In this document: positions 3,976 to 59,044 of the stretch, piece by piece
Position numbering within the stretch: the first letter of the stretch is position 1
How the letters are laid out: each line of letters starts with the position of its first letter
IMG/VR virus record: IMGVR_UViG_3300017763_000002
Location: 62,001-126,000 of that record
Reading direction: 5' to 3' (one strand)
DNA length: 64,000 bases
Notes under the pieces: model-generated
What the model was told of the DNA's origin: nothing
Databases searched by the model: none
What the model saw: the letters and a program-made list of their open reading frames with translations, nothing else
Translations under genes and position numbers: made by a program

Positions 3976-4004
3976 ATAATACCACAGGTTTAACTGTATG
4001 TCAA
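3976..4004 (-). promoter_or_regulatory. sigma70-type promoter for helicase-primase operon
   Basis: Minus strand TTGACA-17 nt-TATTAT; the -10 ends 11 nt before the helicase ATG. Confidence 0.7.
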
Positions 4005-8255: not shown

Positions 8256-8263
8256 TATTACAC
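8256..8263 (-). promoter_or_regulatory. GTGTA motif (candidate late promoter)
   Basis: GTGTAATA starting 15 nt before the ATG at 8248. Confidence 0.6.
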
Positions 8264-9290: not shown

Positions 9291-9319
9291 ATATTACAGC
9301 ATATAACGAATTAAGTCAA
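9291..9319 (-). promoter_or_regulatory. sigma70-type promoter for nrdB
   Basis: Minus strand TTGACT-17 nt-TAATAT; the -10 ends 8 nt before the ATG. Confidence 0.6.
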
Positions 9320-9327
9320 GAAAAAGT

Positions 9328-9966
9328 TCAATCTTTTTGTTCTGGGCACATCAATTTTATTAAATCATTCTGCTGTGTTTTTGAGGCCTTGTTCCATTGA
9401 AGGGCTATATCTTTTCTTTTTTCTTGTATAGTTTTTTCTTTTTCGCATAATTCTTTTTCTATTTTTTCTAAAAAATCAATAGATATTTCTGAAAGATCAA
9501 TGTCTAGATCAAAAGATATTTCTATTAAATCTTCTATCTTGTTAGTCTCTTTAGCCTCTGTAGCGCTTATGAACATCTCTGTAAGCTCTTCGTCTTTTAA
9601 GTCTGGGTGGGTTACTTTCGCGATCTCTCTATATAAAGACTTGACTTCATCAGCTTCTGAGTCTGTCACTTCTTTTGCTTCTGGTTTATCATGAGCTTTA
9701 TCTGCAACAAGCGGGTTTTTGCAATTAGGGTTATTAGCGCAATATTCTATGATTGATGCAAACATTTTTTGTTTAGCTTCGGAAAGCTCTTCTTCTAGGA
9801 TTTCCATTTCTATACTTAAGTATTTGCTTTTATGCTTTAGTCTTAATAAAAATTTATTTTTTTCTGAATTGTTGGTTTTTTTACGTTTGCGTTTTTTATT
9901 GGAAGATGGTCTGTATTTACCAAGCTCCTCTTTTTCCCATTTTTTAAAAGATTCAAAAAAGTCCAT
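9328..9966 (-). CDS. J-domain (DnaJ-like HPD) protein
   Basis: EVKSLYREIAKVTHPDL...FISATEA is J-domain helix II, the HPD loop and helix III, flanked by helical segments. Confidence 0.7.
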   Translation of the reverse strand: MDFFESFKKWEKEELGKYRPSSNKKRKRKKTNNSEKNKFLLRLKHKSKYLSIEMEILEEELSEAKQKMFASIIEYCANNPNCKNPLVADKAHDKPEAKEVTDSEADEVKSLYREIAKVTHPDLKDEELTEMFISATEAKETNKIEDLIEISFDLDIDLSEISIDFLEKIEKELCEKEKTIQEKRKDIALQWNKASKTQQNDLIKLMCPEQKD

Positions 9967-9972
9967 AAGGTT

Positions 9973-9980
9973 TTTTACAC
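9973..9980 (-). promoter_or_regulatory. GTGTA motif (candidate late promoter)
   Basis: GTGTAAAA starting 14 nt before the ATG at 9966, immediately after a terminator T-tract. Confidence 0.6.
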
Positions 9981-11467: not shown

Positions 11468-12601
11468 TTAAATATTCTCAAACAGTTGTGAAGTTTTTTT
11501 AATATTGTCTGGATTGTTCGGGCTGTATTTCCAGCACAACTCTTTTCCTTGTTCTAGTTTTATATCCAAATTATCGTTGTGTTCTTCTGTGGCAAGCTTT
11601 AATTGTTCTGCAGCTTCAATCATATTAAAATCTTCGTAGTAATATCCAAAATCTTTTATAAATTCAGAGTTATGAACTAAAGGGTATCCAAAATGGGCAG
11701 CTTCTAAATACGTATAATTTAATGCATTTAAATGTTGGTGGCTGAGAAAAATGGGGTTATCTTTACTCATAATTTTTGGCATAGCTTCTCGTGGATCGAA
11801 TATCATTCTTTTTATATGGTTTCTGAAAACCCTATCATTTAATATTCTAGATCTTAGTTGATCTTTTTCATCATTGATTAATTTTAATGTGCCAAAGAAT
11901 ATAGCTTTTTCAAAAATATCTGGATAATGTACTAATAAATGTTTAACTGTAAATAATGGAGGTATAAAAGTTTTACTAAAGTTAATATTGGGTTCAACTA
12001 TAGCAATATTATTTTTTTCTTTTATATTGTATTTTAAATCTTTTTCTTGTATATTAAGAACTTGTGCTGAACCATATATAAATTTAGGATCCCATATATA
12101 TGGTAGCTCAAAAGTATTTGGCGAAGTATTTATTTTTAAATAATCTTCACAGAAGTCGTAATGGGGAGAATATAGAACTGCGTCATGAATTAAAGAACTT
12201 GGCTCGGAAGCCCAGCCTCCATGGTTTTCTTCACTGCAAATATAATTACAAATATCTGTAACTAAAACATTTCCATAATTAATGGCAGCAATTTTACATT
12301 CTGAATTCACTGATTTGTATTTTTCTGCATGCTCTGGATTGCATGCTATGCCTGGGGTACAAACGACATCTAAATGGTGCTTTATTGGTGACAATTCATC
12401 GTAAGATATAATGTTTTTATTATTTAAAAAACTTTGTTCAATGTCTGTTTTAATTATAGACTCTTCTTGGTTTCCGCAAAAATCTATAAAAAATACATCG
12501 TGCCCAGCGGATTCAAGTATTTCATAAAGTAGTATTATGTTCTGGTACAACCCGTTAGAAAAAAATCCGTAATTAAATCTAGTAGTTATTCCTATATGCA
12601 T
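11468..12601 (-). CDS. DUF2827-like putative GT-B glycosyltransferase
   Basis: MHIGIT..FFSNGLYQNIILLY; IAIVEPNINFSK; SHQHLNALNYTYLEAAHFGYPLVHNS..GYYY, recognised as the DUF2827 pattern with a GT-B donor-binding-like ExxxxGxP. Confidence 0.65.
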   Translation of the reverse strand: MHIGITTRFNYGFFSNGLYQNIILLYEILESAGHDVFFIDFCGNQEESIIKTDIEQSFLNNKNIISYDELSPIKHHLDVVCTPGIACNPEHAEKYKSVNSECKIAAINYGNVLVTDICNYICSEENHGGWASEPSSLIHDAVLYSPHYDFCEDYLKINTSPNTFELPYIWDPKFIYGSAQVLNIQEKDLKYNIKEKNNIAIVEPNINFSKTFIPPLFTVKHLLVHYPDIFEKAIFFGTLKLINDEKDQLRSRILNDRVFRNHIKRMIFDPREAMPKIMSKDNPIFLSHQHLNALNYTYLEAAHFGYPLVHNSEFIKDFGYYYEDFNMIEAAEQLKLATEEHNDNLDIKLEQGKELCWKYSPNNPDNIKKTSQLFENI

Positions 12602-12607
12602 GAATAT

Positions 12608-12615
12608 TGTTACAC
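12608..12615 (-). promoter_or_regulatory. GTGTA motif (candidate late promoter)
   Basis: GTGTAACA starting 14 nt before the ATG at 12601. Confidence 0.6.
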
Positions 12616-12680: not shown

Positions 12681-12688
12681 GTGTACAG
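12681..12688 (+). promoter_or_regulatory. GTGTA motif (candidate late promoter)
   Basis: GTGTACAG starting 15 nt before the GTG at 12696. The ORF track uses this GTG as the start codon. Confidence 0.55.
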
Positions 12689-12695
12689 ATATAGC

Positions 12696-14741
12696 GTGAG
12701 CAAAAGAAAATATAATAAAAAGTCTGACTATTGGAAAAAATTCGACAAGCCTAATTCACCAGCAATCCCTATAGTCTCTGAGGATCAAGTGCCTCCTGCT
12801 TTTGCTGGAGAGTCTTATTATTCTGAAACCACAAATGCGTCGGTAATATTGCAGCAATCTAATGCGAACAGAAATGAACCAGGGCAAAGTAGGACAAATA
12901 GAAGGTCTAATACTAAAGCTAAAGCTCAAAAGAAAGATAAGTATGAAAATATAAGAAGCGGGGTATTGCCTTATGATTTTTCTTCTAGCGGAATTTCTAT
13001 AAGAGATTCTGTTGAACTCTGCCAGAAGGCCTACGCTAATATATCAATTTTTAGAAACGCAATAGATATTATGTCTGAGTTCGCCAACTCAAATATACAG
13101 CTTCAAGGCGGCAATCAGAAGTCAAGAGAATTTGTATATAAGTGGTTTGATAAAGTTAATTTATGGAAAATTAGAGACCAATACTTTCGAGAGTATTACA
13201 GGTCTGGGAATATCTTCATGTATAGAGTGGACGGAAAATTCACGCGAGAAGACTTTGCTAAAATGTCTAAGGTTTATGGCGGTTTGGAGCCTGGTAGAAT
13301 ACCAATAAGATACATATTTCTTAACCCTTATGATATTATGGCTCATCGGGCGACAACTTTTAGTGAGGGCCAGTATTTTAAAGTCTTATCTGAATACGAT
13401 TTAGAAAGACTGAAGAGCCCCAAGACAGAATATGATCAGCAGGTATTTGATAGTATGCCTAAGGAAGTAAAAGAAATATTAGATACTAATTCTTTTCCAA
13501 GAGATGGGGTTAAAGTTCCTCTTCCTGATGATAAAATTATTCACTCTTTTTATAAAAAGCAGGATTACGAACCGTTTGCAATACCTTTCGGCTTCCCCGT
13601 GTTAGATGATATAAATTACAAAATAGAACTTAAAAAAATAGATCAGGCTATATGTAGAACTATAGAAAATGTTATATTGCTTATTACTATGGGCGCTGAA
13701 CCTGAAAAAGGGGGGATAAATCCTAGAAATTTAGAAGCCATGCAGAAGCTTTTTCAAAACGAAAGCGTTGGGAGGGTTTTGGTTAGTGACTATACTACTA
13801 AGGCAGATTTTGTTATACCAGATATAAGGAAGGTTGTTGGCCCAGATAAATATCAGATAGTTAATCAAGATATTAGGGAGGGATTACAAAACATTATTGT
13901 TGGAGACGAAAGATATAGTAATACTCAAGTAAAAGCAGAAATCTTTTTAGAAAGATTAAAAGAAGCAAGGAACGCTTTTCTTAATGATTTCTTGCAAGAT
14001 CAAATTAAAATGGTTTGCGAAAATATGGGCTTTAGGCAATACCCTGTAGCTCATTTTGAAGAGATTGATATTAAAGACGAAGTCCAATTACAAAGAGTCG
14101 CCACAAGACTGATTGAATTAGGCATACTTACTCCTGAACAAGGAATTAATGCAATTAAATCTGGAATATATCCTGCGGGGGAAGATTTAGATCTCGCTCA
14201 AGAAGAATTTTTGTCTCAAAGAAAAGAGGGTAAATTTAATCCATTAGTCGGAGGAGTTCCTTCTGTTGAGAATCCAGGGGCAGAAAAAGATAGGGCTCTT
14301 CAGAAAGAAACTATGCAAAAAGCTGCACCTCCTGTCCAACAAAGTGCACCTACAAAAGAAAGCGGTAGGCCTACTGGCACTAATGGAATTCCGCAAGAAA
14401 ATAAATCAACAGAAAAAATTACACCTTCAGATATAAAAGATGTTATATTTAAAATAGAAAATTTAAACAAAGCTGTTAAGTCTCAAGTATTAAAAAAGCA
14501 TTCTGTAAAAAAACTTAATAAAGCACAAAATAAAATGGTAGACGAATTATGCGAATCTATTATATGCTCTTCTAGTCAAAATGAATGGGAAAAAGTTGCG
14601 CAATGCTGTATGGATGATAATAATCAAATCGCTAAGTTACAAGTAATTCCTGAGATACTAGATATAAGTCAAGAGAAGGAGCTGGGTTTGTATCCGTCGG
14701 CTATATTTTATCATAGTATGGGGGAATTTACTGATGATTAA
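12696..14741 (+). CDS. Probable portal protein
   Basis: Size and portal-like pattern (FRNAIDIMSEFAN...QYFREYYRSGNIFMY; PFAIPFGFPVL; helical C-half; GRP tail); first gene of a structural block. Start refined to GTG 12696 (MSKRKY). Confidence 0.6.
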   Translation: MSKRKYNKKSDYWKKFDKPNSPAIPIVSEDQVPPAFAGESYYSETTNASVILQQSNANRNEPGQSRTNRRSNTKAKAQKKDKYENIRSGVLPYDFSSSGISIRDSVELCQKAYANISIFRNAIDIMSEFANSNIQLQGGNQKSREFVYKWFDKVNLWKIRDQYFREYYRSGNIFMYRVDGKFTREDFAKMSKVYGGLEPGRIPIRYIFLNPYDIMAHRATTFSEGQYFKVLSEYDLERLKSPKTEYDQQVFDSMPKEVKEILDTNSFPRDGVKVPLPDDKIIHSFYKKQDYEPFAIPFGFPVLDDINYKIELKKIDQAICRTIENVILLITMGAEPEKGGINPRNLEAMQKLFQNESVGRVLVSDYTTKADFVIPDIRKVVGPDKYQIVNQDIREGLQNIIVGDERYSNTQVKAEIFLERLKEARNAFLNDFLQDQIKMVCENMGFRQYPVAHFEEIDIKDEVQLQRVATRLIELGILTPEQGINAIKSGIYPAGEDLDLAQEEFLSQRKEGKFNPLVGGVPSVENPGAEKDRALQKETMQKAAPPVQQSAPTKESGRPTGTNGIPQENKSTEKITPSDIKDVIFKIENLNKAVKSQVLKKHSVKKLNKAQNKMVDELCESIICSSSQNEWEKVAQCCMDDNNQIAKLQVIPEILDISQEKELGLYPSAIFYHSMGEFTDD

Positions 14742-19074: not shown

Positions 19075-19082
19075 GTGTAATA
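19075..19082 (+). promoter_or_regulatory. GTGTA motif (candidate late promoter)
   Basis: GTGTAATA starting 14 nt before the ATG at 19089; a second GTGTAAAA lies at 19063. Confidence 0.6.
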
Positions 19083-19088: not shown

Positions 19089-20378
19089 ATGGCAAGAAAA
19101 TTAAGAATTGGTTTTGATGGAGGTTTAGATGTTTACCCTAATCCTTATACTGATAGTTCCTTTTATGCCTGTGATGGTAGAAATGATCATTTTGACGCGA
19201 ATGGTGTTAGATATAATAATTACCACATCATGGGAAGATATCCTGTGAATACTTACACTAGACCAGGATGGTATTCTGGATCTAGGCATGCCTGGTATTA
19301 TGTTAACACATCAACCAATGGTGGCACTGTAAATTATGCAGGAGCAGGTAAGTGCGCTACTTGGTATAATGGTCAGAATTGTATACCCCGCTGGAATGTC
19401 AATGCTTTTGATCAAGGGTTTTTTGCTAGATACGATCAACGCACTGTAGGAGTTTATACTGATGAAAACGACGTTTCACCAAGCGGTGGGCTTGTTCTGT
19501 TTGTCGCTGGCGACGCAAGCGGAAATGTGGTTATCGCCTATATTGCAGCAGATTTAGAAGGAGGAGGCGACGTATTAAAAACTACTCCTGGATTTCAAAA
19601 TAAGAAAATTTTTATTGCGACTAGAAAAAGTGGAGAATTTAATCCCGATAGTACATCTGATAACATCTTGGAATCAGAGATCGTTGCCTCAAGCCCTAAT
19701 TTAAATATTCTTAAGAACGAATGGGCGGATGTAAAATTATCTATAAATAATTCTGGAGAAATTTATATTTCTTATCACGGCGTAGAAGTAGAATATGATT
19801 TGAAGCAGGAAGATTGGGTTACTGATGGATCTTTTAGTTCTTGGGATTGGTTGATGGCCCTAGGATCAAGTAGGCAGAATGATTATATTGATAATTTATC
19901 TATAAATGACGGATCTGGATCGAGTGATAATGGAATTCCAAACCGATCAAAAATGTATATTCTTAGCGATTCAATGTCTTACGAAGCAGGTCAGTCTTCT
20001 TTGGTTAGCGATAATGGTTTTGGTGCAATAGGAACAATTTTATCCGACGGACAAGACGACACTTATGTTACTGTCTCAAAGGGCGGTAGTATTGTGATGA
20101 AATTAAATAACTTGAATTTTTTACCAGCTGAAGGGCATGGGTTTTCTAATGCAAAAATAACAGGAATTGCTACTAAATTCTCTGGATTAAGAGCTGTAAA
20201 CTCGGGGCAAAAAATAAATTTAAAAATAAATAATATTTATTCTGGGACGGAAACTTCAGAAGTTAAATACCTTTCCCTTACTCAGGGGTACGAAATAATG
20301 CAGGATTATGTTTTTCCGCAAAATATAACAGACACATCTTCAGCTGTATTTGAATTAAAACTGGAGTACGAGTCTTAA
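19089..20378 (+). CDS. Putative virion protein (beta-sandwich/lectin-like), paralogue of the next gene's N-half
   Basis: Aromatic/Gly/Asn-rich; shares the MAxK.R.GF start and S(I/V)NDGSGS.DNG motif with 20380..24435. Confidence 0.6.
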   Translation: MARKLRIGFDGGLDVYPNPYTDSSFYACDGRNDHFDANGVRYNNYHIMGRYPVNTYTRPGWYSGSRHAWYYVNTSTNGGTVNYAGAGKCATWYNGQNCIPRWNVNAFDQGFFARYDQRTVGVYTDENDVSPSGGLVLFVAGDASGNVVIAYIAADLEGGGDVLKTTPGFQNKKIFIATRKSGEFNPDSTSDNILESEIVASSPNLNILKNEWADVKLSINNSGEIYISYHGVEVEYDLKQEDWVTDGSFSSWDWLMALGSSRQNDYIDNLSINDGSGSSDNGIPNRSKMYILSDSMSYEAGQSSLVSDNGFGAIGTILSDGQDDTYVTVSKGGSIVMKLNNLNFLPAEGHGFSNAKITGIATKFSGLRAVNSGQKINLKINNIYSGTETSEVKYLSLTQGYEIMQDYVFPQNITDTSSAVFELKLEYES

Positions 20379-25956: not shown

Positions 25957-26681
25957 TCGGAGTTCATCTTTCCTTCAACAACATACTTGACGGTGTATCC
26001 AGAAATTGTATGATCTCTTTTGAATGATAAGATATTATCTCTTTCAATATCTGAAAAACCCATTGAAAATCCATCTTCAATAAAAACGTAATCAGGTTGA
26101 TCATCCATTCTGAATTTTAATTTATATAATGTATCGTTGATAATAAAAACGTCTGAACTTGGGTTTTCATCATGACCGTAAGCATCAAAGTAACCAAAAC
26201 TATCTCCAGAGTACTGATCTAACCTTATTGCAAATTTTTGATCTGTGTCAAAATTAAATATTCTTTCGCTGCAATGTAGTTCGTCTATATCTTCTTGTAG
26301 TATAAAGAATTGTTCTTTTTCTTTTAGAGCTGTTGTTGGATTAAATACTGTTTCACATTCATCTGGTAAAGAAAATAGTTCGTCGGTTGTTTCTAATATT
26401 AATATATCTTCGTCAATTTTTTGATTAAAGATTTTTGTTCTTTCTGATCTTGCTTGAAGACCGCTAATATTAAACTTTATTTTTTCTAAATCTTGATTGA
26501 TTTCATTAAAATTATTATTATCATTTTGTATTAAAATACTATTTTCTTCAGAGATTTTATCTAGTAAGGTTGAATTTAAATTTTCGTTTTGAGTATACAA
26601 ACTACCAAGAGAACTCATTACAGAATTTTGGTAATCTATTTGCTCTCGACTTTGACTGCTTCTGAAATTAGATATATTCAT
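25953..26681 (-). CDS. Hypothetical protein, paralogous domain to the upstream gene
   Basis: Start refined to ATG 26681 (ATGA overlap); N-terminal coiled coil; C-terminal ...KRDHTISGYTVKYVVE. Confidence 0.65.
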   Translation of the reverse strand: MNISNFRSSQSREQIDYQNSVMSSLGSLYTQNENLNSTLLDKISEENSILIQNDNNNFNEINQDLEKIKFNISGLQARSERTKIFNQKIDEDILILETTDELFSLPDECETVFNPTTALKEKEQFFILQEDIDELHCSERIFNFDTDQKFAIRLDQYSGDSFGYFDAYGHDENPSSDVFIINDTLYKLKFRMDDQPDYVFIEDGFSMGFSDIERDNILSFKRDHTISGYTVKYVVEGKMNSE

Positions 26682-28573
26682 TTTATAAATTCCCCTAAAG
26701 CGTATCTTCTCCATTCGTCTCTGCCTTTATCGCCACCTACCTTAACAGATCCACCTGCGTGTTTTAAATATATAAAATACTTATCTGCCCAAAAATTATT
26801 ATGACCCTGCATTGGTATTTGAGCTGTATACGCCCACTCTACCAAAGGTATTCTGCGGTCTATTTCCTGCCTGACATAAAGCCATTGATTGTCTACGTAA
26901 GTGTCATAATAGTCCAGTGGGAAAGCTCTTTCTCCTCTTCTTAAGCAATGCTCCCAAGCGGCAATAGCCATTCTTTTCCATCCTGTTCCATAAGCGACAT
27001 AAACATAAGTGTTATCGGCTATTATAGACCCAAGTCCAAGTCTTGAATGAGTTTGCTCTGGGCTCATGATGTGAGCATCTTTTTCGTCAAATAGATTTTC
27101 TTCAGGAGTGTACATTCTTTCTATACTATAACGAACTTCAAAGCCAGATATGGTATATTGTCTTCTTAGAAAAGTTTGATACGCTTCATCTTTAGTTAGC
27201 TCCATTTTTTGACCTTCATGTAAACTGAAATCTGAACCTCCGCCTCTAAAATAAACTTCCAGTGGGAATGGGCTATCATTATATATTGTAACTTTATCGT
27301 CACTACCCATTCTTTTGGGAAATGGAAATAGGGATTGGTATCCATCTGTATTTCCCTTGTAATCTTCAAACCTAATTGAATGTGGCATTACTTCGTCAAA
27401 AACAAACAGCCTATCTTTGTTCATTTCTCCTTGGAAGTCTTCAGCTAATAACATTTCCTGTGATAATTCAGGCGTTGCTGTAGAATCGTAACGACCGTTG
27501 TATGTTACTTTGTTGAATAATTTATCATACAAAGATGCATCTTCTGGCTTATCATAATCGATTGTCGTCTCTTGAATCATACCTTCTTCTTCAAATTTTT
27601 TTACATAAAAAGTTAAGTCTCTGAAATTACCCTTTAGCTCTTCTAGGGTTAGGTTTGATTGTTCTGTATTAACGCTAACATTTCTTAGGTTTCTTTCGTT
27701 TTCTATATAATGCAACTCGTTGTGTCCAGATATACCAGATAGTAATCTATGCGTTTCTGGATCTGCCCCCAGTTCTACATTAAGTTTTTCTAAAGTTCCA
27801 GAGATGCCAGATAACCATTCGTTCGAATCTTCTATTAGGTCTTCTATTTCTTCAGAAGAATCTAATATTCCAGAGCCAACTTCTAGATTATCTTGATGTA
27901 TTAAGTTTGCATCTTCTAGCTCTTCTAGAATTAAATTTTTAACATCTATTTGCTCTTGCTGTTTTTGAAGTTGGACTTCTTGGTTTTCTCTTATTTTTCT
28001 AGAATCTTCTTGGTTAGATTCTTTCAACTCATCTATAGAGAACTCTATGTCTTGAAGATGTGTGTGGGTCTGATTGATCATTACATGAGTATGACCAAAT
28101 CCTGTTGCTACTGTGTTTTGTAAATCGTCTAAGTTCTCGTTTATTTCATCTGCGCTAGATTCTATAACACCAGAAATACCTGATAATATTCTGTGGGTTT
28201 CTATATCTTGAGTGTCTAAACTCTCTTGAAGTAATCCAGATATTGCGGATAATAAATTGTGTGTTTTTATATCTTCTGGATTTAAGTTTTCCAGTATACC
28301 TGATATTCCAGAAAGTAAACTATGCGTTTGCTCATCAGAGGAACTGCCATCTAGATTAGATAGCTCTCCTGATATTCCAGATAAAATTCTATGTGTATTT
28401 ACATCATTAGGCTCTAGATTTAACTCAAGATTATCGATGTTAATCGCAGCGCCGGTGTTAGGGACCCATTGCCCCATCTTTTCGTCCCATTGAAATGTAA
28501 AAGCTACATTATGGGAGGGGTCCAGCTTTTGTATCTGGCTGTTAAAAAGAGGGTTATTTTGGAAATCCGGCAT
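26678..28573 (-). CDS. Putative fibre-like virion protein
   Basis: Five THx(I/L)LS(G/A)ISG units, an acidic coiled coil, a central domain shared with the next gene, and three C-terminal beta-hairpin units (DNTYVYVA..WKRMAIAAW type). Confidence 0.65.
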   Translation of the reverse strand: MPDFQNNPLFNSQIQKLDPSHNVAFTFQWDEKMGQWVPNTGAAINIDNLELNLEPNDVNTHRILSGISGELSNLDGSSSDEQTHSLLSGISGILENLNPEDIKTHNLLSAISGLLQESLDTQDIETHRILSGISGVIESSADEINENLDDLQNTVATGFGHTHVMINQTHTHLQDIEFSIDELKESNQEDSRKIRENQEVQLQKQQEQIDVKNLILEELEDANLIHQDNLEVGSGILDSSEEIEDLIEDSNEWLSGISGTLEKLNVELGADPETHRLLSGISGHNELHYIENERNLRNVSVNTEQSNLTLEELKGNFRDLTFYVKKFEEEGMIQETTIDYDKPEDASLYDKLFNKVTYNGRYDSTATPELSQEMLLAEDFQGEMNKDRLFVFDEVMPHSIRFEDYKGNTDGYQSLFPFPKRMGSDDKVTIYNDSPFPLEVYFRGGGSDFSLHEGQKMELTKDEAYQTFLRRQYTISGFEVRYSIERMYTPEENLFDEKDAHIMSPEQTHSRLGLGSIIADNTYVYVAYGTGWKRMAIAAWEHCLRRGERAFPLDYYDTYVDNQWLYVRQEIDRRIPLVEWAYTAQIPMQGHNNFWADKYFIYLKHAGGSVKVGGDKGRDEWRRYALGEFIK

Positions 28574-28580
28574 ACATTAT

Positions 28581-28588
28581 ATGTACAC
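28581..28588 (-). promoter_or_regulatory. GTGTA motif (candidate late promoter)
   Basis: GTGTACAT starting 15 nt before the ATG at 28573. Confidence 0.6.
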
Positions 28589-28605
28589 CTAACTGAACTT
28601 ATGTG

Positions 28606-28950
28606 TTAATCTTTGTCCAAGTGGTGTTTTATTCCGTTTCTTTTAGCGGAATATTCTTTGAAGTACTTTTTCCTTAATGGATCATACCCGTATTTATCTT
28701 TTCTTTGCTGACTTAGTTCCGAACTTTTATCTACCATTTCTCCGTAAGTGCCTTTAGTATTACCTGTTTTATTAATAAAAGCAACGTTATCCATTGGGTC
28801 GATATCACTATCAATACTGCAATTAGGATTTAAGAAGACCCTTTTCCATTCAATATCATCTTGGTCTTTAAATGATTTTTCATCATTCATATGAAAGAAA
28901 ATTTCTTGATATTCTTCTTTCTCAGGATGTTTGAATATATATATTGGCAT
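28606..28950 (-). CDS. Small protein with degenerate FmdB-like N-terminus
   Basis: MPIYIFKHPE...EIFFHMND resembles MPxYxYxC zinc-ribbon starts but lacks the Cys pairs. Confidence 0.5.
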   Translation of the reverse strand: MPIYIFKHPEKEEYQEIFFHMNDEKSFKDQDDIEWKRVFLNPNCSIDSDIDPMDNVAFINKTGNTKGTYGEMVDKSSELSQQRKDKYGYDPLRKKYFKEYSAKRNGIKHHLDKD

Positions 28951-30038
28951 TATAATGAATTAATTATGGAATCAACTGTATTAGAATATGTGAATTTATT
29001 TTTTAATTTGGTTCCATTTATATTATATTTGTTTTTACTTATAATATCTAGTGCTTTATCTAGTGCAGAATTAAATTGATCTTTATTGAATGTATACATG
29101 TATCCCTGATTAAACTCTAAGTCTTTGTAAAAAAACTTTTGGTCATATATTTCTATTCTTTCTTTTGGTTCGACTAATACAGAATTATCTTCTGTGGCCC
29201 AGTCTTTATGTGAGGAGCAGTTTAGTACTATGGGTAATTTACCTAAGCAGGTAGAATTGAAGACAGGTAGATTCCAGCCTTCTCCACCACTGAGACCTCC
29301 AAGGTCTATGTCTATAGAGTTGAGATAGTCATTTACTTGAGCATTGGTTTTTAACCAAGGCAGGAAGTTTATATTGTGGTACTGTCTGTTGTTTAATGTA
29401 GATTTTTTGAGCTTTGCAATTTCTTCGTTCTTTAAAAATTTATTTCCTACGCAACAAGTAAGCTGGTACTTTGGGTCATCTCCAAATCTTTCGCTCCACA
29501 TTCTTATTATCTTTTCTGTGTTTTTTCTTTTTTCCCATTTACCCATTAATCCGAAATGTATTTTATCGGACATATATTCTTTCTTGGTTTCAAAAAAGTC
29601 TTCATCAAATCCAAGTGGACTATGATTTGAATTTTCTACACCGGCATCACTAAAGTAATCCTTACTAAAATTACTACTAAAGACGCATCTATCGTAGGTA
29701 TTTAATATGTTAACTTCTTGAGGTGTTGCTTGTCCAGTTTCGTGGAATGTATATAGTATATTGTAGTCAGACATTTTATCTTCTGCTCCATTAATATGCC
29801 ATATATTTAAGAAGGGAGTGTTTTTATTAATTTTATTATATCTATTTTTTATTGCTTCGTTGATATAGGATGATAAATCATTATCTATATTAGAAAAGCT
29901 AGATAAGTCTACTGTGTTTTTTGTAGGAAATAAAGCTAAATTAATATTTTTTCTATATAATTCTCTTATTATATTGTACGATACGTTACCTAGTGATAGG
30001 TTGTTGATCGGAGCTTTTAATATTAAATTATTAATCAA
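28950..30038 (-). CDS. Glycosyltransferase, GT4-like (GT-B)
   Basis: YTFHET; VFSSNFSK; PLGFD; GLMGKWEKRKNT; GGEGWNLPVFNSTCLGK. TTG start overlapping the ssb stop. Confidence 0.75.
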   Translation of the reverse strand: MINNLILKAPINNLSLGNVSYNIIRELYRKNINLALFPTKNTVDLSSFSNIDNDLSSYINEAIKNRYNKINKNTPFLNIWHINGAEDKMSDYNILYTFHETGQATPQEVNILNTYDRCVFSSNFSKDYFSDAGVENSNHSPLGFDEDFFETKKEYMSDKIHFGLMGKWEKRKNTEKIIRMWSERFGDDPKYQLTCCVGNKFLKNEEIAKLKKSTLNNRQYHNINFLPWLKTNAQVNDYLNSIDIDLGGLSGGEGWNLPVFNSTCLGKLPIVLNCSSHKDWATEDNSVLVEPKERIEIYDQKFFYKDLEFNQGYMYTFNKDQFNSALDKALDIISKNKYNINGTKLKNKFTYSNTVDSIINSL

Positions 30039-30424
30039 AATGGCACCTCATCTTCGTCTTCTTCAAAAGCTTCTTCTTCAACCTTAGCTTTAGGTTTTTG
30101 ATCATTTGTTGGTTGGCTAGAGTCTATTCTTAAAAATTGAACAGTGTCTGCAACACAAAATATTTTAGATCTACTTTCTCCAGACTGAGATTTCCATTGA
30201 TTAAGCTCTAGTCTTCCATCCACGCAAACCGCAGATCCTTTTTTTAAAAATTTATGACAATTAACCGCAGTTTTATTCCAACATTCAATATCAATATAAA
30301 GTACTGATTTTTTAATTGGATTATTTACAGCTATACTAAACCTACATACAGACATTTGATCTGAAATGTTTTTTATTTCTGGGTCTTTTGTTAAGTTTCC
30401 AATGATTGATAGTCTATTTAACAT
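30035..30424 (-). CDS. ssb: Single-stranded DNA-binding protein
   Basis: NRLSIIGNLTKDPE; FLKKGSAVCVDGRL; acidic tail EDEDEVPF. Confidence 0.93.
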   Translation of the reverse strand: MLNRLSIIGNLTKDPEIKNISDQMSVCRFSIAVNNPIKKSVLYIDIECWNKTAVNCHKFLKKGSAVCVDGRLELNQWKSQSGESRSKIFCVADTVQFLRIDSSQPTNDQKPKAKVEEEAFEEDEDEVPF

Positions 30425-31010
30425 TTTTAATTCCTTCTTGTTTGAGTTTTTCTTTAATAAATTTTATGCCAACAGAGTGTAAATTTATACACCCTTGGGA
30501 GCTTAAGCCCATAACCGTACCAACTTCATGCCAAGGCATTACTTTATTAGAATTGCTTTTTCCTATATGGTATCTTAGTTTAAAAATTTTTATAACTCTC
30601 ACATCATGAATATGATTTAACATATCCATTGAGATGTTATATATAGATTCTGAAGTTTGATCTTTTTGGTCTTCTTGATTTATACTTATAAAATCATTAA
30701 GCTTGATGTGGTTTTGGTTTTTAATTAACTTGTTCATCTTATTAAAGAAAGCCCATTTCATTTCGTTAGCTAGAAAGGTAGAAAACTTAGTGGATCTAAG
30801 TGGATCGTATTTTTTAGCAGAAAGATATATAGTATGATGCATTTCGTCCTTAAGCTCATCCAATAATATGTAGGTGTTAAACCTTTTTGATAGTTTATAA
30901 ATTATCGACATGCATAGTTTTTGATGGCGTTCAAAAAGTTTTACAACTGAGTCGTTACAATTAGACTGTTTAACTTCCGCCACCAAATCTATGTCTTTTG
31001 TTTTGTTCAT
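30414..31010 (-). CDS. Phage RNA polymerase sigma factor (sigma70 family, regions 2 and 4)
   Basis: Region 2: LFERHQKLCMSII...AKKYDPLRSTKFSTFL. Region 4 HTH: IFKLRY..MPWHEVGTVMGLSSQGC. Start refined to ATG 31010 (ATGA overlap). Confidence 0.75.
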   Translation of the reverse strand: MNKTKDIDLVAEVKQSNCNDSVVKLFERHQKLCMSIIYKLSKRFNTYILLDELKDEMHHTIYLSAKKYDPLRSTKFSTFLANEMKWAFFNKMNKLIKNQNHIKLNDFISINQEDQKDQTSESIYNISMDMLNHIHDVRVIKIFKLRYHIGKSNSNKVMPWHEVGTVMGLSSQGCINLHSVGIKFIKEKLKQEGIKNVK

Positions 31011-31552
31011 TTGAAGCATAGCTCCCCCTTTTTTTGTATAATATTTTTCACTTGCGACATATAGTCATCTTTGAAAGTTGGAACGTCCACTTTTATGTCT
31101 GACATGGATTTTAATATTGGATCTTGTTCACTTTCATCTTTATTAGCAGGAAGTATGCCTTGCCTACTTAAATGCACTAAGATACCTTTTTTATTTTTTA
31201 TCCACTTAGCTTCGTTTTCAAATCTAACATCTGTGATAATAAAAGATTCAGATTCTTCTGAAGCGTTAATTTTTTCGTTTAGCTTTTTTATCCAGCAATT
31301 CTTATCAAGCTTCCTTCTAATATGCGTTCCATATGTAACTAAAAAAGGACGGATAATACTTTTCTCTTCGTCTCTTTCTGTGAATGCAGATATATTTATA
31401 TTCTTTCTTAAAAAATCATCACACTCATTTTTAAGTTCATCAGCAAAGGCTGCCCTCCTGACTCTAATACTAGAATTTATATCGCTAATACATTTAAATA
31501 ATGTATCCTTTCCTACTCGAGCAACCCCAGTTATACCTATTATTTTATACAT
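31007..31552 (-). CDS. Deoxynucleoside monophosphate kinase
   Basis: P-loop IIGITGVARVGKDT; AFADELK; RPFLVTYGT; ITDVRFENEA. Confidence 0.85.
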   Translation of the reverse strand: MYKIIGITGVARVGKDTLFKCISDINSSIRVRRAAFADELKNECDDFLRKNINISAFTERDEEKSIIRPFLVTYGTHIRRKLDKNCWIKKLNEKINASEESESFIITDVRFENEAKWIKNKKGILVHLSRQGILPANKDESEQDPILKSMSDIKVDVPTFKDDYMSQVKNIIQKKGELCFK

Positions 31553-31841
31553 CCTTAAAAAGCGTTTTAATTGCCTCTCCCAACCTTTTGTCTCCGATGT
31601 AGTCTGCCACTTCTACTACAGACGTAAATTTTAACGAGTTCTCTAGAGATAGTTCTTTGATAGTTTGTTCTATATTCATTATTATTATTATTTTTGATAA
31701 TTTGTATCGTTCTGGCTCCTCCGTGATTTCCTCAAAAGCTTGCTTTACTGCGCTTTGCTTACTTTCTGCGTTAACAATCTTTTGCCAATTACCGGAGCTA
31801 ATAAGGAAAAAGTCATTTTTGTCGTCATCTATTTTGATCAT
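31545..31841 (-). CDS. Hypothetical protein
   Basis: About 98 aa; the ATG at 31841 is preferred over the TTG at 31877; overlaps the kinase start. Confidence 0.55.
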   Translation of the reverse strand: MIKIDDDKNDFFLISSGNWQKIVNAESKQSAVKQAFEEITEEPERYKLSKIIIIMNIEQTIKELSLENSLKFTSVVEVADYIGDKRLGEAIKTLFKDV

Positions 31842-31892
31842 TGGTTGAATACTACCATATCTACAAGTAATAGTCAAGTCATAACATATCTA

Positions 31893-31906
31893 ATATCAAT
31901 TGATAT
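31893..31906. promoter_or_regulatory. 14-bp palindrome in a very AT-rich divergent intergenic region (candidate operator or origin element)
   Basis: ATATCAATTGATAT; only 5 G/C in 31881-31930. Confidence 0.45.
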
Positions 31907-31972
31907 ATATTATATAAATATTATATAGTAATAGACGATTCAAAAATCAACCGACCCTAGTTTAAAAAAAAC

Positions 31973-32001
31973 TTGACTTTATTGGAATCCTGTTATATCA
32001 T
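31973..32001 (+). promoter_or_regulatory. sigma70-type promoter
   Basis: TTGACT-17 nt-TATCAT; the predicted +1 falls at about the ATG at 32008. Confidence 0.65.
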
Positions 32002-32007
32002 CATCTC

Positions 32008-32337
32008 ATGAAACAAAAATTCATAACAATACCAGTTTCAATTATGGATGATGTTATTTCTGGAAAGTTAATATCAACAGATGTAATGATCTATATGTTC
32101 TTAAGTAGTAAGTGTAGTCATGGGAAGAGGGTTTTCATGAGTCGTAAAAAAATGAGAGACGGACTTGGCGGGGTATCTGTTAGCAGGCTTTCTGCTAGTT
32201 TAGGTAGGCTTTCTTCCGCTGGCCATCTAGAGAGAGAAAAATTAAACGGGATAACCTCCACAAGACTATTGACGTTCGTTAAAGATAGGTACAATATATA
32301 TACAAAAGGAAAGAATATTTATGAGAATATCAGTTAA
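32008..32337 (+). CDS. Winged helix-turn-helix DNA-binding protein
   Basis: STDVMIYMFL...FMSRKKMRDGLGGVSVSRLSASLGRLSSAGHL, typical of the N-terminal HTH of phage replication initiators. Confidence 0.6.
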   Translation: MKQKFITIPVSIMDDVISGKLISTDVMIYMFLSSKCSHGKRVFMSRKKMRDGLGGVSVSRLSASLGRLSSAGHLEREKLNGITSTRLLTFVKDRYNIYTKGKNIYENIS

Positions 32338-33247
32338 ATTTGAGGGCGGGCTAGGAGATCATGTTTTAGCCAATAGATTTATTCCCGCTATATTGGAAAC
32401 ATATCCAGGAGCAGAAATCCATTTATTCTCAGATACAAATGGATCATCTTTTCAGAGCGATGTTATAACTTCTTTGTATAATTTTTATAAAGAAGTACAT
32501 TTAGTAAAAAGAAAATCTGAAAAATATGAAATATTAAGTCAATTCGGAAAAGAAAACTACCCACCGCATCCGCCTAATCTAGATGACGAACAAAGAGAAT
32601 ACATGGAATCTTTTGATAAATTTTATAATTTACATATCGACTGGCTACAGTGGATGGATTATGAATTTCCTTGGCAGAAATATTTTAGCTTTTTCCCGAC
32701 GCCGCATTCTGATATTAAAAATTTTAATCATGATAAAGATTATATCATTTTACATATCGCCTCAGACAATAGAGGCAACAATCATAGAATGAGTAAAGAG
32801 TACATTCACAGCATAATTAAAAAATGCACAAAAGAATATGATGTTTTCCTTTTATCAACTGACTCTACAGACGATTTTGTAAGAAAAGTGTGTCCAGATA
32901 TAGATGGCGTTTTTGTATTGAAAGAAAACATTAACACTGTTATTTCTGCATGCAAAAGTGCCTCTGGTATTTTTGCTATAGATTCCGCAATCAAATACTT
33001 TGGATATACTTTTAACGTACCCACTTTGTGTTGGGCTAAAGAATCTACTGCAGCACACTCGTGCCCGACTTCATTCAAGATGCGCTGGTTAACTTTCCCA
33101 CTATTAACATTTCCCTTAGAGCATGACTCAAATTACATGTGGGGCGCAATGAATAACTTAATAAACAATAACAACAATATTTTTTGCCCACACCTTCAAG
33201 AGCCAGAATTATCGAACACTTTAATCAGAAGGAGGATATGGACTTAA
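32321..33247 (+). CDS. GT9 (heptosyltransferase)-like glycosyltransferase
   Basis: GGLGDHVLA..IPAILETYPGAEIHL; YIILHIAS; IFAIDSAIKYFGYTFNVPT, a variant of GxDSGxxHxAxAxxxPT. Confidence 0.65.
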   Translation: MRISVKFEGGLGDHVLANRFIPAILETYPGAEIHLFSDTNGSSFQSDVITSLYNFYKEVHLVKRKSEKYEILSQFGKENYPPHPPNLDDEQREYMESFDKFYNLHIDWLQWMDYEFPWQKYFSFFPTPHSDIKNFNHDKDYIILHIASDNRGNNHRMSKEYIHSIIKKCTKEYDVFLLSTDSTDDFVRKVCPDIDGVFVLKENINTVISACKSASGIFAIDSAIKYFGYTFNVPTLCWAKESTAAHSCPTSFKMRWLTFPLLTFPLEHDSNYMWGAMNNLINNNNNIFCPHLQEPELSNTLIRRRIWT

Positions 33248-58699: not shown

Positions 58700-59044
58700 T
58701 TATACCTTTATAGGTTTACACCCTTCCTCATTAAAAAATACAAAATTATCATAAATACAACTATATATTAAAAGAGGAATGGCATGATTACGAAAGATAT
58801 CCTTATCTTTCTCAGAAGGGTGTGCGTCAGATTGAGGGTGGGAATGAAAAATTGAGTGGATTTTATCTTTAAGTAAAATAACCTTTGGGTCTATCTTGAA
58901 ATTGCTACTTTTATCTTCAGCAAGATTCTCCATTTTCATAAACACTAGTTCATCAAACTGGAATATGACTCCAGCGATTTCGTTAGAACTTAACCTGGAC
59001 TCGGCTTTAATTCCTTCAAGTAATAGAGTAGAATATTCACACAT
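58700..59044 (-). CDS. JAB/MPN-domain tail assembly protein (gpK N-domain-like)
   Basis: EIAGVI..IFHSHPQSDAHPSEKD is a JAMM motif. Start refined to ATG 59044 after AGGTGA. Confidence 0.75.
   Translation of the reverse strand: MCEYSTLLLEGIKAESRLSSNEIAGVIFQFDELVFMKMENLAEDKSSNFKIDPKVILLKDKIHSIFHSHPQSDAHPSEKDKDIFRNHAIPLLIYSCIYDNFVFFNEEGCKPIKV

What the first reader, a model, noticed from the sequence alone, without database searches (positions are those of the whole stretch)
30414..31010. Phage sigma factor with a rewired -10-recognition region, candidate reader of GTGTA
Region 2 keeps DPxRxxKFST but reads FLANEMKW where housekeeping sigma70 has YATWWIRQ, so the Trp-Trp dyad and region 2.4 residues used on TATAAT are changed. 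A region 4 HTH is retained. Inference: this sigma redirects host RNAP to a non-TATAAT element. Together with the sigma70 promoters on replication genes it would give a two-tier early/late programme.
Basis: partly seen in the sequence, partly recalled or inferred. Interest (0 to 1): 0.65.

Follow-up and report, generated by a model that had tools for sequence, protein, structure and literature searches.

The report
Marine jumbo-phage sigma factor, GTGTA promoters
This gene very probably encodes a phage sigma factor, made early from a host-type promoter, and it is the best candidate for steering the host RNA polymerase to a short GTGTA promoter element that heads the structural genes of a widespread uncultured marine jumbo phage lineage.

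Summary
Window 30414..31010/31019 (minus strand) is a 198/201-aa ORF containing DPLRSTKFST and FLANEMKW. It folds as a two-domain sigma factor (sigma2 plus sigma4). HMM hits are weak but all point to sigma factors, and structural hits are almost all sigma factors.

The window is part of a complete 204.9-kb marine phage genome with no phage RNA polymerase detected.

GTGTA is a real signal:
- It is the most under-represented 5-mer in the genome.
- It is the most enriched 5-mer upstream of genes (31 genes against 1.1 expected).
- It sits at operon heads, most often as GTGTA-N9-ATG, which implies leaderless mRNAs.
- It has no -35 partner.
- It is conserved in four other complete genomes and about 140 related loci.

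A second class of clean TTGAC(A/T)-N17-TAnnnT promoters drives the early genes, including this sigma gene's own operon, in all five genomes.

One complication: the phage has a second, ECF-like sigma gene outside the window. In all five genomes it lies downstream of a GTGTA site. This wiring favours the window's sigma as the first GTGTA reader, but it is not proof.

The loss of the Trp-Trp dyad is normal for alternative sigma factors. The closest functional analogue is phiEco32 gp36, which reads AATGTA.

Verdict: a new member of a known kind, and of moderate interest.

The parts
30414..31010 (-). Sigma factor gene ('sigma1'), 198 aa from Met4. The longest ORF runs to 31019 (201 aa).
   Evidence: ORF. 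Met4 overlaps the upstream stop as ATGA, and homologues start there. Sigma HMM hits. Sigma fold.
30753..30806 (-). Region 2.2/2.3/2.4 segment, D72..W89 (DPLRSTKFST + FLANEMKW). The family hallmark is KF(S)T(Y/F)L(G/A)NE(T)KW.
   Evidence: Invariant K78, F79, T81, N85 and nearly invariant W89 across 33 homologues. Aligned to KFSTYATWWIRQ of SigA.
30438..30542 (-). Region 4 helix-turn-helix (residues 160-194) with the invariant recognition-helix motif QGCIN(L/I)H.
   Evidence: Invariant Q175-N179 and H181. Model helices 163-170 and 174-194. Superposes on SigD, SigR and SigF sigma4 domains.
31849..31877 (-). Sigma70-type promoter TTGACT-N17-TAGTAT, ending 7 nt before the ATG (31841) of the first gene of the operon that contains the sigma gene.
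   Evidence: The same arrangement occurs in all four complete relatives.
31545..31841 (-). First gene of the operon (98 aa, function unknown). Predicted leaderless.
31007..31552 (-). Deoxynucleotide monophosphate kinase gene, directly upstream of the sigma gene and translationally coupled to it.
   Evidence: Pfam DNMK, 9e-12.
30035..30424 (-). Single-strand DNA-binding protein gene. It overlaps the 3' end of the sigma gene by 11 nt.
   Evidence: Pfam SSB, 1.2e-23.
31973..32001 (+). Divergent sigma70-type promoter TTGACT-N17-TATCAT, 6 nt before the ATG at 32008. It drives the plus-strand operon of ribonucleotide reductase and glycosyltransferase genes.
28584..28588 (-). GTGTA element, N10 before the ATG of the 631-aa gene (26678..28573), downstream in the same strand run as the sigma gene.
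19075..19079 (+). GTGTA-N9-ATG element before the 429-aa gene (19089..20378).
12681..12685 (+). GTGTA element, N10 before an in-frame GTG of the plus-strand ORF listed as 12681..14741. It lies in a divergent intergenic region.
12611..12615 (-). GTGTA-N9-ATG element before the 377-aa gene (11468..12601). It is the divergent partner of the previous site.
9976..9980 (-). GTGTA-N9-ATG element placed immediately after a G+C-rich hairpin and a run of T (terminator-like). It precedes the 212-aa gene (9328..9966).
8259..8263 (-). GTGTA element, N10 before a 74-aa gene. It heads the minus-strand run that includes the UvsX-like recombinase and the DnaB-like helicase.
58717..58721 (-). GTGTA element 20 nt before the 1632-aa tail protein gene (Phage-tail_3 domain), with a Shine-Dalgarno-like AAGG in between.

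Best explanation
**What the gene is.** The gene encodes a compact sigma-70-family factor (sigma1). It has a sigma2 domain (about residues 5-105), a short disordered linker and a sigma4 domain (about 120-198), with no sigma1.1 or sigma3.

**Proposed programme** (steps marked inferred are not shown):
1. Host RNA polymerase with its own primary sigma reads strong TTGAC(A/T)-N17-TAnnnT promoters early in infection (inferred). One of these lies 7 nt before the first ATG of the operon that runs 98-aa gene, dNMP kinase, sigma1, SSB.
2. Sigma1 then binds the host core enzyme (inferred).
3. Sigma1 directs the core enzyme to a single-element promoter: GTGTA followed by A and W-rich sequence, with no -35 element (inferred).
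4. If the A of the ATG is the start site, GTGTA lies at about -14 to -10. Many of these transcripts would then be leaderless.
5. GTGTA promoters head the tail, tail-fibre, tape-measure and packaging operons and some replication and recombination genes. They also head the operon of a second, ECF-like phage sigma (sigma2), which would act later.

**Possible recognition residues (inferred).** By position, the family's invariant Asn85 and conserved Tyr/Phe82-x6-Trp89 replace the housekeeping Trp-Trp wedge. This resembles the Tyr83-x6-Trp90 of phiEco32 gp36.

**Shown:** the sigma fold, the reality, conservation and placement of the motif, and the promoter wiring.
For: **Sigma identity**
- PHROG 351, 6.5e-7.
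- TIGR02937 and FliA/WhiG, about 2e-5.
- Family profile against PDB: FliA 2.2e-5, SigA 1.8e-4, 58 of 60 listed hits are sigma factors.
- 13 of 33 members hit Sigma70_r2.
- AF2 model pLDDT 82; all top-50 Foldseek hits are sigma factors.
- Domain matches: sigmaE region 2 at Z 11.2, rmsd 2.4 A over 94 residues; SigD sigma4 at Z 9.3.

**Core binding**
- Residues 1-112 with E. coli beta' 225-345 gave ipSAE 0.40 against a best control of 0.00.
- The tool's verdict was 'weak support'. The mark was reached by 51 of 78 solved complexes and 2 of 108 mismatches. Only 5 of those 78 solved complexes scored 0.60 or under, as did all 4 mismatched pairs that passed. The runs agree in at least 58% of contacts and partner pLDDT is at least 74.

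**No phage RNA polymerase found**.

**GTGTA is a selected signal**
- 107 copies against about 434 expected from base composition and 213 from an order-3 Markov model. It is the most depleted 5-mer.
- 31 of 197 upstream windows hold it against 1.1 expected. It is the top 5-mer.
- It sits at operon heads and in divergent intergenic regions.
- It is the top upstream 5-mer in three further complete genomes, and GTGTAA is the top 6-mer in the fourth.
- Pooled over loci: 151 against 11.5 expected, and 355 against 11.7 expected, over 139 related loci. In two unrelated phages the figures are 2 and 4 against 1.2.

**Promoter rather than translation signal**
- Spacing to the ATG is variable (9-38 nt) in genome G001, with Shine-Dalgarno-like sequences in between.
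- In the N9 class the base before the ATG is T in 82% and C in 17% of sites.

**Wiring.** In all five genomes sigma1 lies behind a sigma70-type promoter with no GTGTA in its unit. Sigma2 lies 2-3 genes behind a GTGTA site.

**No third promoter motif** was found.

**Analogue.** phiEco32 gp36 reads AATGTA centred at -11.5, with W90 as the wedge and Y83 stacking on the -11 base (PMC12276001).
Against: - Nothing directly links sigma1 to GTGTA.
- Sigma2 co-occurs with sigma1 in every complete relative. It is more conserved (45-60% identity against about 31%). Its family gave more IMG/VR matches (476 confirmed relatives against 71, though each search used its own seed patterns). Its neighbourhood is the richer in GTGTA sites.
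- ECF-type sigma factors commonly autoregulate (general knowledge), so a GTGTA site before sigma2 could also mean that sigma2 reads it.
- Sigma1 keeps an invariant sigma4 recognition helix, QGCIN(L/I)H. Yet 413 non-redundant GTGTA sites show no -35 information. What that helix binds is unexplained.
- Single-sequence HMM scores are below the curated thresholds.
- The complex prediction is only weak support, and it used E. coli beta' because the host is unknown.
- No transcription start sites are available. The RNA runs held only sparse contigs.
Confidence: 0.55

Rival explanations
1. Sigma2, the ECF-like sigma with a Cys-rich insert encoded outside the window, is the GTGTA reader and autoregulates its own operon. 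Sigma1 would then read a rare promoter type that was not detected, or would play an accessory role.
For: - Sigma2 passes the Pfam Sigma70_r2 cut-off (25.4 bits) and hits sigma-factor PHROGs.
- It is highly conserved and its family gave 476 confirmed relatives in IMG/VR.
- Every one of the 69 sigma2 loci analysed carries at least 2 GTGTA sites.
- ECF sigma factors typically autoregulate and use GT(A/C)-type -10 elements (general knowledge). SigmaE region 2 complexes with GTC/GTA-type -10 DNA are among the structural hits.
Against: - No sigma2 protein exists at the start of infection, and no sigma70-type promoter lies in its transcription unit in G000, G001, G002 or G003. Something else must open GTGTA first.
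- ECF sigma factors normally need a -35 element, and none exists here.
- No separate motif for sigma1 was found.
Confidence: 0.22
2. There is a relay on one element. Sigma1 opens GTGTA promoters in the middle phase. Sigma2, itself a GTGTA-class product, takes over or boosts the same or a subtly different subset late in infection. This would resemble sigma pairs with overlapping specificity in Bacillus sporulation.
For: - There are two phage sigma factors but only one phage-specific motif.
- GTGTA heads replication and recombination operons as well as structural ones.
- The base after GTGTA splits into A (about 60-68%) and T/C.
- Sigma2-operon sites carry C or T at that position in 4 of 5 genomes.
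Against: - No functional partition between the GTGTAA and GTGTAT/C sites was visible in G000 (inspection).
- The idea is purely inferential.
Confidence: 0.15
3. The host RNA polymerase holoenzyme, with the primary or a host alternative sigma and perhaps a phage co-factor, reads GTGTA. Sigma1 would be a decoy or anti-sigma-like competitor rather than an initiation factor.
For: - GTGTA contains TG and TA and lies where an extended -10 element would be.
- The complex prediction gave only weak support for core binding.
Against: - The element lacks the TAnnnT signature. There is no T enrichment four bases after the A.
- It is off register with TGnTATAAT.
- The sigma2 and sigma4 folds are intact and the DNA-facing helices are conserved.
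Confidence: 0.05
4. GTGTA is not a promoter element. It would instead be a translation-initiation or RNA-processing signal tied to the start codon.
For: The modal spacing to the ATG is fixed: N9 in 194 and N10 in 97 of 429 sites.
Against: - Only about 15% of genes carry it, and these are operon heads and divergent regions.
- In G001 the spacing varies from 9 to 38 nt, with Shine-Dalgarno-like sequences between GTGTA and the ATG.
- The sigma70-type promoters in the same genomes show the same tight spacing to the ATG: 17 of 31 end 6-8 nt before it. The spacing therefore reflects leaderless design, not the motif's function.
Confidence: 0.03

Closest known systems
phiEco32 gp36 (phage sigma reading AATGTA centred at -11.5; PMC12276001)
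   Same: - Both are compact two-domain phage sigma factors (214 aa against 198-201 aa).
- gp36 drives the middle and late genes and phiEco32 early genes use host sigma70; the same division is inferred for sigma1.
- gp36's promoter consensus, and the element assigned to sigma1, is a single TGTA-containing element near -12 with no consensus -35.
- The DNA-facing helix has an aromatic-x6-Trp pattern: gp36 Y83..W90, sigma1 F/Y82..W89.
- A dNMP kinase gene lies nearby in both.
   Different: - No detectable sequence relationship: hhalign probability 0.15%. gp36 is absent from the profile hits.
- The motif is GTGTA(A) rather than AATGTA.
- No gp79-like partner has been identified.
- This phage carries a second sigma.
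- Many transcripts here appear leaderless.
- The host is an unknown marine bacterium.
ECF (group 4) sigma factors, e.g. E. coli sigmaE and B. subtilis SigW
   Same: - Both have the sigma2-linker-sigma4 architecture without sigma3.
- The best structural matches of the N-terminal domain are ECF sigma factors: sigmaE region 2 at Z 11.2 and SigW at Z 9.8.
- TIGR02937 aligns over residues 26-192.
- ECF -10 elements are short GT(C/A)-type motifs (general knowledge).
   Different: - The score is below the TIGR02937 cut-off (23.8 against 42.9).
- There is no -35 element.
- No anti-sigma gene was recognised nearby.
- The hallmark KFST(Y/F)LGNETKW is closer in sequence to group 1/3 region 2.3 (KFSTYA) than to ECF sigma factors.
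FliA/WhiG (sigma28, group 3)
   Same: - This is the best sequence-profile hit: P. aeruginosa FliA at 2.2e-5 over residues 17-106, and TIGR02479 at 2.3e-5.
- FliA also lacks the Trp-Trp dyad.
   Different: - The score is far below the family cut-off (24.2 against 189.6 bits).
- There is no sigma3 domain.
- The GTGTA element differs from the sigma28 promoter as I recall it (TAAA-N15-GCCGATAA; from memory, not checked here).
T4 gp55 (late sigma reading TATAAATA)
   Same: - It is a phage sigma that uses a -10-only promoter for late genes.
- There is a structural match at Z 8.4 (7d7c_F).
   Different: - gp55 has no sigma4 domain and needs gp33 plus the sliding clamp (general knowledge).
- Sigma1 carries its own conserved sigma4 domain.

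Membership tests
Sigma-70 superfamily | Sigma2 domain recognised by a curated HMM (Pfam PF04542 or TIGR02937) at its cut-off. | tested here: inconclusive
   - This protein scores 16.2 bits against a cut-off of 24, and 23.8 against 42.9.
- 13 of 33 family members hit PF04542 at E<=0.01, best 6.8e-6, and no other family is hit.
- The family profile hits FliA at 2.2e-5.
Sigma-70 superfamily | Sigma2 fold. | tested here: met
   Residues 5-105 match sigmaE region 2 at Z 11.2, rmsd 2.4 A, over 94 of 94 residues. SigW, RpoS and SigC region 2 also match. The model has pLDDT 82.
Sigma-70 superfamily | Sigma4 domain with a helix-turn-helix. | tested here: met
   Residues 120-198 match SigD sigma4 (Z 9.3 and 9.0), SigR region 4 (Z 8.1) and SigF (Z 8.0). 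Pfam r4 models do not hit.
Sigma-70 superfamily | Binds the beta' clamp helices of core RNA polymerase. | tested here: inconclusive
   ipSAE 0.40 against a best control of 0.00. The verdict was 'weak support'. The test used E. coli beta' 225-345 because the host is unknown.
Sigma-70 superfamily | Confers promoter-specific initiation. | not testable with these tools
   This needs in vitro transcription or reporters.
Group 1 (housekeeping) sigma70 | Trp-Trp dyad and Gln/Thr/Arg of regions 2.3-2.4, plus regions 1.1 and 3. | tested here: not met
   Asn85, Glu86 and Trp89 align to the W, W and Q of KFSTYATWWIRQ. The protein is only 201 aa with two domains.
ECF (group 4) sigma | Two-domain sigma2-sigma4 architecture. 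| tested here: met
ECF (group 4) sigma | Family HMM at its cut-off, and bipartite -35/-10 cognate promoters. | tested here: not met
   TIGR02937 is below its cut-off. The candidate promoters have no -35 information in 413 sites.
FliA/WhiG (group 3) | TIGR02479 at its cut-off, and a sigma3 domain. | tested here: not met
   24.2 bits against 189.6. No sigma3 domain is present in the model.
phiEco32 gp36 family | Detectable homology to gp36. | tested here: not met
   hhalign of the 33-member profile against gp36 gave probability 0.15%, E 0.39.
phiEco32 gp36 family | Reads a single TGTA-containing element near -12. | not testable with these tools
GTGTA sits at -14..-10 only if the A of the ATG is the start site.

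The most novel reading that the evidence does not exclude
This marine jumbo-phage lineage would run its whole post-early programme on one -35-less element, GTGTA, placed so that transcription starts at the start codon (obligate leaderless operon heads). Two phage sigma factors would be used in relay. The invariant sigma4 helix of sigma1, QGCIN(L/I)H, would bind not a -35 box but sigma2 or another phage or host factor. That would be a sigma hand-over mechanism not described for any phage.
Probability: 0.15. Interest if true: 0.75.

Novelty: new member of a known kind. Interest (0 to 1): 0.5.

Why it matters
Phage-encoded sigma factors are one of the classic ways of reprogramming host RNA polymerase, but few have a known promoter.

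This case offers the following:
- A previously uncharacterised sigma family is tied by conserved wiring to a very clean promoter element.
- The family has no match in cultured phages and only sub-threshold HMM hits.
- The phage lineage is abundant. Runs from 14 marine or seawater studies hold at least part of this stretch, and the partner sigma gave 476 confirmed relatives in IMG/VR.
- The result is a ready-made, testable regulatory map (host-type promoters, then sigma1, then GTGTA units including a second sigma) for uncultured jumbo phages.
- GTGTA and the tight promoter-to-ATG spacing can be used to annotate transcription units and start codons in these genomes.
- The system is compact and possibly orthogonal, with a 5-bp core element and leaderless output. 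It could be tried in reporter assays.

Tried and rejected
- **tblastn against 50,697 cultured phage records.** Sigma1 and sigma2 gave no match. The large terminase is at most 27% identical to any record. There is therefore no cultured relative to lean on.
- **PHROG and Pfam scans of neighbours and GTGTA-driven genes.** Most gave no family. The late-gene label rests on the tail, fibre, tape-measure and terminase hits.
- **Presence or absence of the two sigma genes.** They always co-occur in the complete genomes G001-G005, so this test could not discriminate between them.
- **Covariation of the motif with sigma residues.** The motif does not vary across the five genomes, so there is no leverage.
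- **Third promoter motif.** Only residual TTGAC/TATAAT and Shine-Dalgarno words were found.
- **A -35 partner for GTGTA.** None was found in 120 sites, and none in 413 sites.
- **Generic promoter scan of window 28000-33000.** 23 sites against 24.5 in shuffles, so it is uninformative in this AT-rich DNA. Only the strict genome-wide pattern is significant: 50 against 16.5 +/- 5.
- **GTGTA-N9-ATG in the window alone.** 3 against 1.2 expected, which is not significant by itself. The case needs the whole genome.
- **RNA evidence.** The four RNA runs laid (X17-X20) hold only sparse contigs and show no transcript starts. The sigma gene itself is barely covered.
- **Homology to phiEco32 gp36.** Not detected.
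- **Phage RNA polymerase.** PF00623 gave no match. PF00940 gave no match either, but that search also failed to ring in any control genome and is therefore weak. The giant ORFs are tail proteins.
- **Complex prediction with E. coli beta'.** It passed the mark, but only as 'weak support'.
- **The large representative-protein search** was not run. The claim does not rest on absence of relatives.
Full report
**Setting.** The window is bases 62001-126000 of a 204,906-bp virus record that is rated 100% complete and has 35.8% G+C. Public runs from 14 marine or seawater studies hold at least part of this stretch. No phage RNA polymerase was found. PF00623 gave no match. PF00940 gave no match either, but that search also failed on the control genomes. 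The giant ORFs (5895, 3418, 2343, 1832, 1632, 1575 and 1296 aa) carry tail-fibre, tape-measure, minor-tail and Phage-tail_3 domains. The large terminase is at most 27% identical to any cultured phage. This is an uncultured marine jumbo phage with lambda-like tail genes.

**The observation.** On the minus strand, 30414..31019 is a 201-aa ORF. Its ATG overlaps the TGA of the upstream dNMP-kinase gene as ATGA, and the nearest homologues start there. The 198-aa form is therefore the likely product. The strings DPLRSTKFST (residues 72-81) and FLANEMKW (82-89) are present.

**Is it a sigma factor?** The single-sequence scans all point the same way but stay below the curated cut-offs:

| Model | Result |
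|---|---|
| Pfam Sigma70_r2 | E 0.0089, 16.2 bits against a cut-off of 24 |
| PHROG 351 'RNA polymerase sigma factor' | E 6.5e-7 |
| TIGR02937 sigma70-ECF | E 2.9e-5 over residues 26-192 |
| FliA/WhiG | E 2.3e-5 |

- The word search found only 12 metagenomic relatives. A pattern scan of IMG/VR found 71 loci at 30-42% identity.
- A profile of 33 diverse members hits P. aeruginosa FliA at 2.2e-5 and SigA at 1.8e-4. Of the 60 listed PDB hits, 58 are sigma factors.
- 13 of the 33 members hit Sigma70_r2, and no other Pfam family is hit.
- The AlphaFold2 model (pLDDT 82) returns only sigma factors among the top 50 Foldseek matches.
- Domain by domain, residues 5-105 superpose on E. coli sigmaE region 2 (Z 11.2, rmsd 2.4 A, 94 residues). 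Residues 120-198 superpose on the SigD, SigR and SigF sigma4 domains (Z 8.0-9.3).
- A complex prediction of residues 1-112 with E. coli beta' 225-345 scored ipSAE 0.40 against 0.00 for the best control. This passes the mark but is rated 'weak support'. The mark was reached by 51 of 78 solved complexes and 2 of 108 mismatches, and passes at or below 0.60 are more often wrong than right unless the guess was likely beforehand. The runs agree in at least 58% of contacts and partner pLDDT is at least 74.

I put the probability that this is a functional sigma factor at about 0.9.

**The 'rewired' region 2.** The profile alignment to SigA puts KFsTylgNetkw against KFSTYATWWIRQ. In E. coli numbering, quoted from memory, this gives:

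| Sigma1 residue | Housekeeping sigma70 position |
|---|---|
| F82 (Tyr in most relatives) | Y430 |
| N85 | W433 |
| E86 | W434 |
| K88 | R436 |
| W89 | Q437 |
| N93 | R441 |

- K78, F79, T81 and N85 are invariant and W89 is nearly invariant across the family.
- The description is therefore correct. However, FliA also lacks the dyad: it has IR there. The change marks an alternative sigma, not an unusual one.
- In phiEco32 gp36, W90 stacks on the last duplex base pair (-12) and Y83 stacks on the first unpaired base (-11) (PMC12276001). The gp36 sequence reads T-Y83-x6-W90. Sigma1 has T81-F/Y82-x6-W89.
- This is a positional parallel only. hhalign finds no relationship (probability 0.15%).

**GTGTA is real.**
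- The genome holds 107 copies on both strands. About 434 are expected from base composition and 213 from an order-3 Markov model. GTGTA is the single most under-represented 5-mer.
- 31 of 197 gene-upstream windows contain it, against 1.1 expected. This 27-fold enrichment is the highest of any 5-mer.
- The sites face the downstream gene and sit at operon heads and in divergent intergenic regions. One directly follows a terminator-like hairpin.
- The modal spacing is GTGTA-N9-ATG (14-15 sites). Longer spacings carry AAGGA- or GGAG-like ribosome-binding sequences.
- Four other complete genomes of 194-205 kb were fetched. Their sigma1 homologue is only about 31% identical.
- GTGTA is the top upstream 5-mer in three of them (31, 29 and 19 genes against 1.5-1.8 expected). 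In the fourth (G001, 45% G+C) GTGTAA is the top 6-mer (14 against 1.4).
- Pooled over 139 related 8-20-kb loci, the counts are 151 against 11.5 and 355 against 11.7 expected. Two unrelated phages of similar G+C gave 2 and 4 against 1.2, and GTGTA is not depleted in them.
- Within the window alone, GTGTA-N9-ATG is not significant (3 against 1.2).

**What kind of signal is it?**
- In G001 the distance to the ATG ranges from 9 to 38 nt, with ribosome-binding sequences in between. GTGTA is therefore not a translation signal.
- In 413 non-redundant sites no position from -55 to -15 carries more than 0.06 bit. There is no -35 element. There is only G/C-poor flanking sequence and a preference for A right after GTGTA.
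- There is no T four bases after the A, so this is not TAnnnT.
- In the N9 class the base before the ATG is T (82%) or C (17%). This is the pyrimidine-purine pair favoured at start sites. It suggests that transcription starts at the A of the ATG, which places GTGTA at -14..-10.
- phiEco32's AATGTA is centred at -11.5.

**The other promoter class, and leaderless design.**
- Strict TTGAC(A/T)-N16-18-TAnnnT sites number 50, against 16.5 +/- 5 in Markov random genomes.
- 31 of them have a gene start within 150 nt. 17 of these end 6-8 nt before the ATG.
- They cluster in the small-gene regions (0-8.6 kb and 163-204 kb). They also precede the helicase gene, the RNR operon and the operon that contains the sigma gene.
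- TTGAC at 30 nt before the ATG is the strongest positional word in the relatives too.
- Both promoter classes therefore commonly produce leaderless first genes. Internal genes use AAGGA-type ribosome-binding sites.

**Wiring.**
- In all five genomes sigma1 is the third gene of a unit made of a gene of about 100 aa, the dNMP kinase and sigma1.
- That unit is headed by TTGACT-N17-TA(n)nAT, ending 5-7 nt before the first ATG.
- No GTGTA lies in that unit.
- In the window the promoter is at 31849-31877 (minus strand). It is divergent from a twin promoter at 31973-32001 that drives the RNR and glycosyltransferase operon.

**A second sigma.**
- Outside the window, at genome position 41100-41909 (L079:5100-5909), lies a 269-aa ECF-like sigma with a Cys-rich insert.
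- It scores 25.4 bits on Sigma70_r2, over the cut-off, and hits PHROG 1740.
- It shares a strand run with the large terminase.
- It is 45-60% identical across the relatives and gave 476 confirmed relatives in IMG/VR.
- It co-occurs with sigma1 in every complete genome examined.
- In all five genomes it lies 2-3 genes downstream of a GTGTA site.
- No sigma70-type promoter lies in its unit in G000.
- No third promoter motif emerged from the remaining upstream regions.

**Interpretation.**
- The simplest programme is: host holoenzyme, then the early units including sigma1, then the GTGTA units (structural, packaging, some replication genes, and sigma2).
- Because no sigma2 protein exists at the start of infection, sigma1 is the better candidate for the first GTGTA reader. 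I put this at about 0.55, plus about 0.15 for a relay in which both sigma factors read it.
- The main rival (about 0.22) is that sigma2 reads GTGTA and autoregulates, as ECF sigma factors often do.
- Unexplained: sigma1's sigma4 recognition helix QGCIN(L/I)H is invariant over the whole family, although the candidate promoters have no -35 box.

**Expression data.** The four RNA runs laid (X17-X20) hold only short contigs. Exact-match pieces cover parts of the SSB gene and of neighbouring genes. One contig begins 4 nt inside the first plus-strand gene (32012). Contigs cannot show transcript starts, and the sigma gene itself is barely covered.

**Comparison and novelty.**
- Functionally, the closest system is phiEco32 gp36. 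Structurally, the closest are the ECF sigma factors. By sequence profile, the closest are FliA and SigA.
- The protein meets the fold criteria of the sigma-70 superfamily. It fails the curated thresholds of every subfamily tested (see the membership table).
- It is a new family within a known kind, phage-encoded alternative sigma factors.
- It comes with a clean, newly defined cognate-candidate promoter and a conserved leaderless architecture in an abundant uncultured marine phage lineage.

Noticed in passing
L079:5100-5909 (+) = genome 41100-41909, outside the window: A second phage sigma factor of 269 aa. It has an ECF-like region 2, a Cys-rich insert (CxxC ... C ... CxxC) and a region 4. 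It lies in the strand run that contains the large terminase. It is always downstream of a GTGTA site. It gave 476 confirmed relatives in IMG/VR.
   Followed up: partly
L083:9776-10138 (+) = genome 169776-170138: A phage-encoded one-piece tmRNA (Rfam RF00023, 139.8 bits), with predicted tag AKNIVSFEDFVHSEELALAA. From memory only, the start of the tag resembles cyanobacterial ANNIVSF-type tags. This is a possible lead to the host.
   Followed up: partly
L083:19633-19708 (+) = genome 179633-179708: A tRNA-Thr(TGT) gene immediately followed by a GTGTA-N9-ATG site.
   Followed up: no
Genome-wide; in the window for example 31849-31877 (-), 31973-32001 (+), 9291-9319 (-), 3976-4004 (-): Strong sigma70-type promoters end 6-8 nt before the start codon (17 of 31 gene-proximal sites). 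This implies widespread leaderless mRNAs for the first genes of operons. The pattern is conserved in all five complete genomes.
   Followed up: partly
window 43540-53796 (-), 53798-58696 (-), 60077-63967 (-); also genome 18704-36391 (+): Very large tail genes:
- a 3418-aa fibre with a C-terminal endosialidase-chaperone domain;
- a 1632-aa protein with a Phage-tail_3 domain;
- a 1296-aa minor tail protein;
- a 5895-aa ORF with CBM_5_12 and RCC1 repeats.
   Followed up: partly
window 10541-10600 and 10853-10912 (-), inside ORF 10034-11431: Two nearly identical stretches of about 55 nt, 312 nt apart, inside a 465-aa ORF of unknown function. This suggests an internal repeat in the protein.
   Followed up: no
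Genome 177639-177920 and 182102-182441 (L083/L084), outside the window: Repeated intergenic elements (a GC-rich hairpin-like unit followed by a terminator-like hairpin) occur between small early genes. They could be small RNAs or a processing or terminator module.
   Followed up: no
window 33978-35363 (+), 39706-42809 (+), 36688-39123 (+): The operon divergent from the sigma operon encodes a HAD hydrolase fused to a nucleotidyl transferase, two glycosyltransferases and a class I-type ribonucleotide reductase with an ATP cone. The nucleotidyl-transferase part is 66-68% identical in DNA to genes of Synechococcus myoviruses.
   Followed up: no
L215:2488-4411 (-) in phiEco32, compared with window 30414-31552 (-): In phiEco32 the sigma gene gp36 also lies two genes from a dNMP kinase gene (gp34) on the same strand. 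Here the kinase gene is directly upstream of the sigma gene. This may be coincidence.
   Followed up: no
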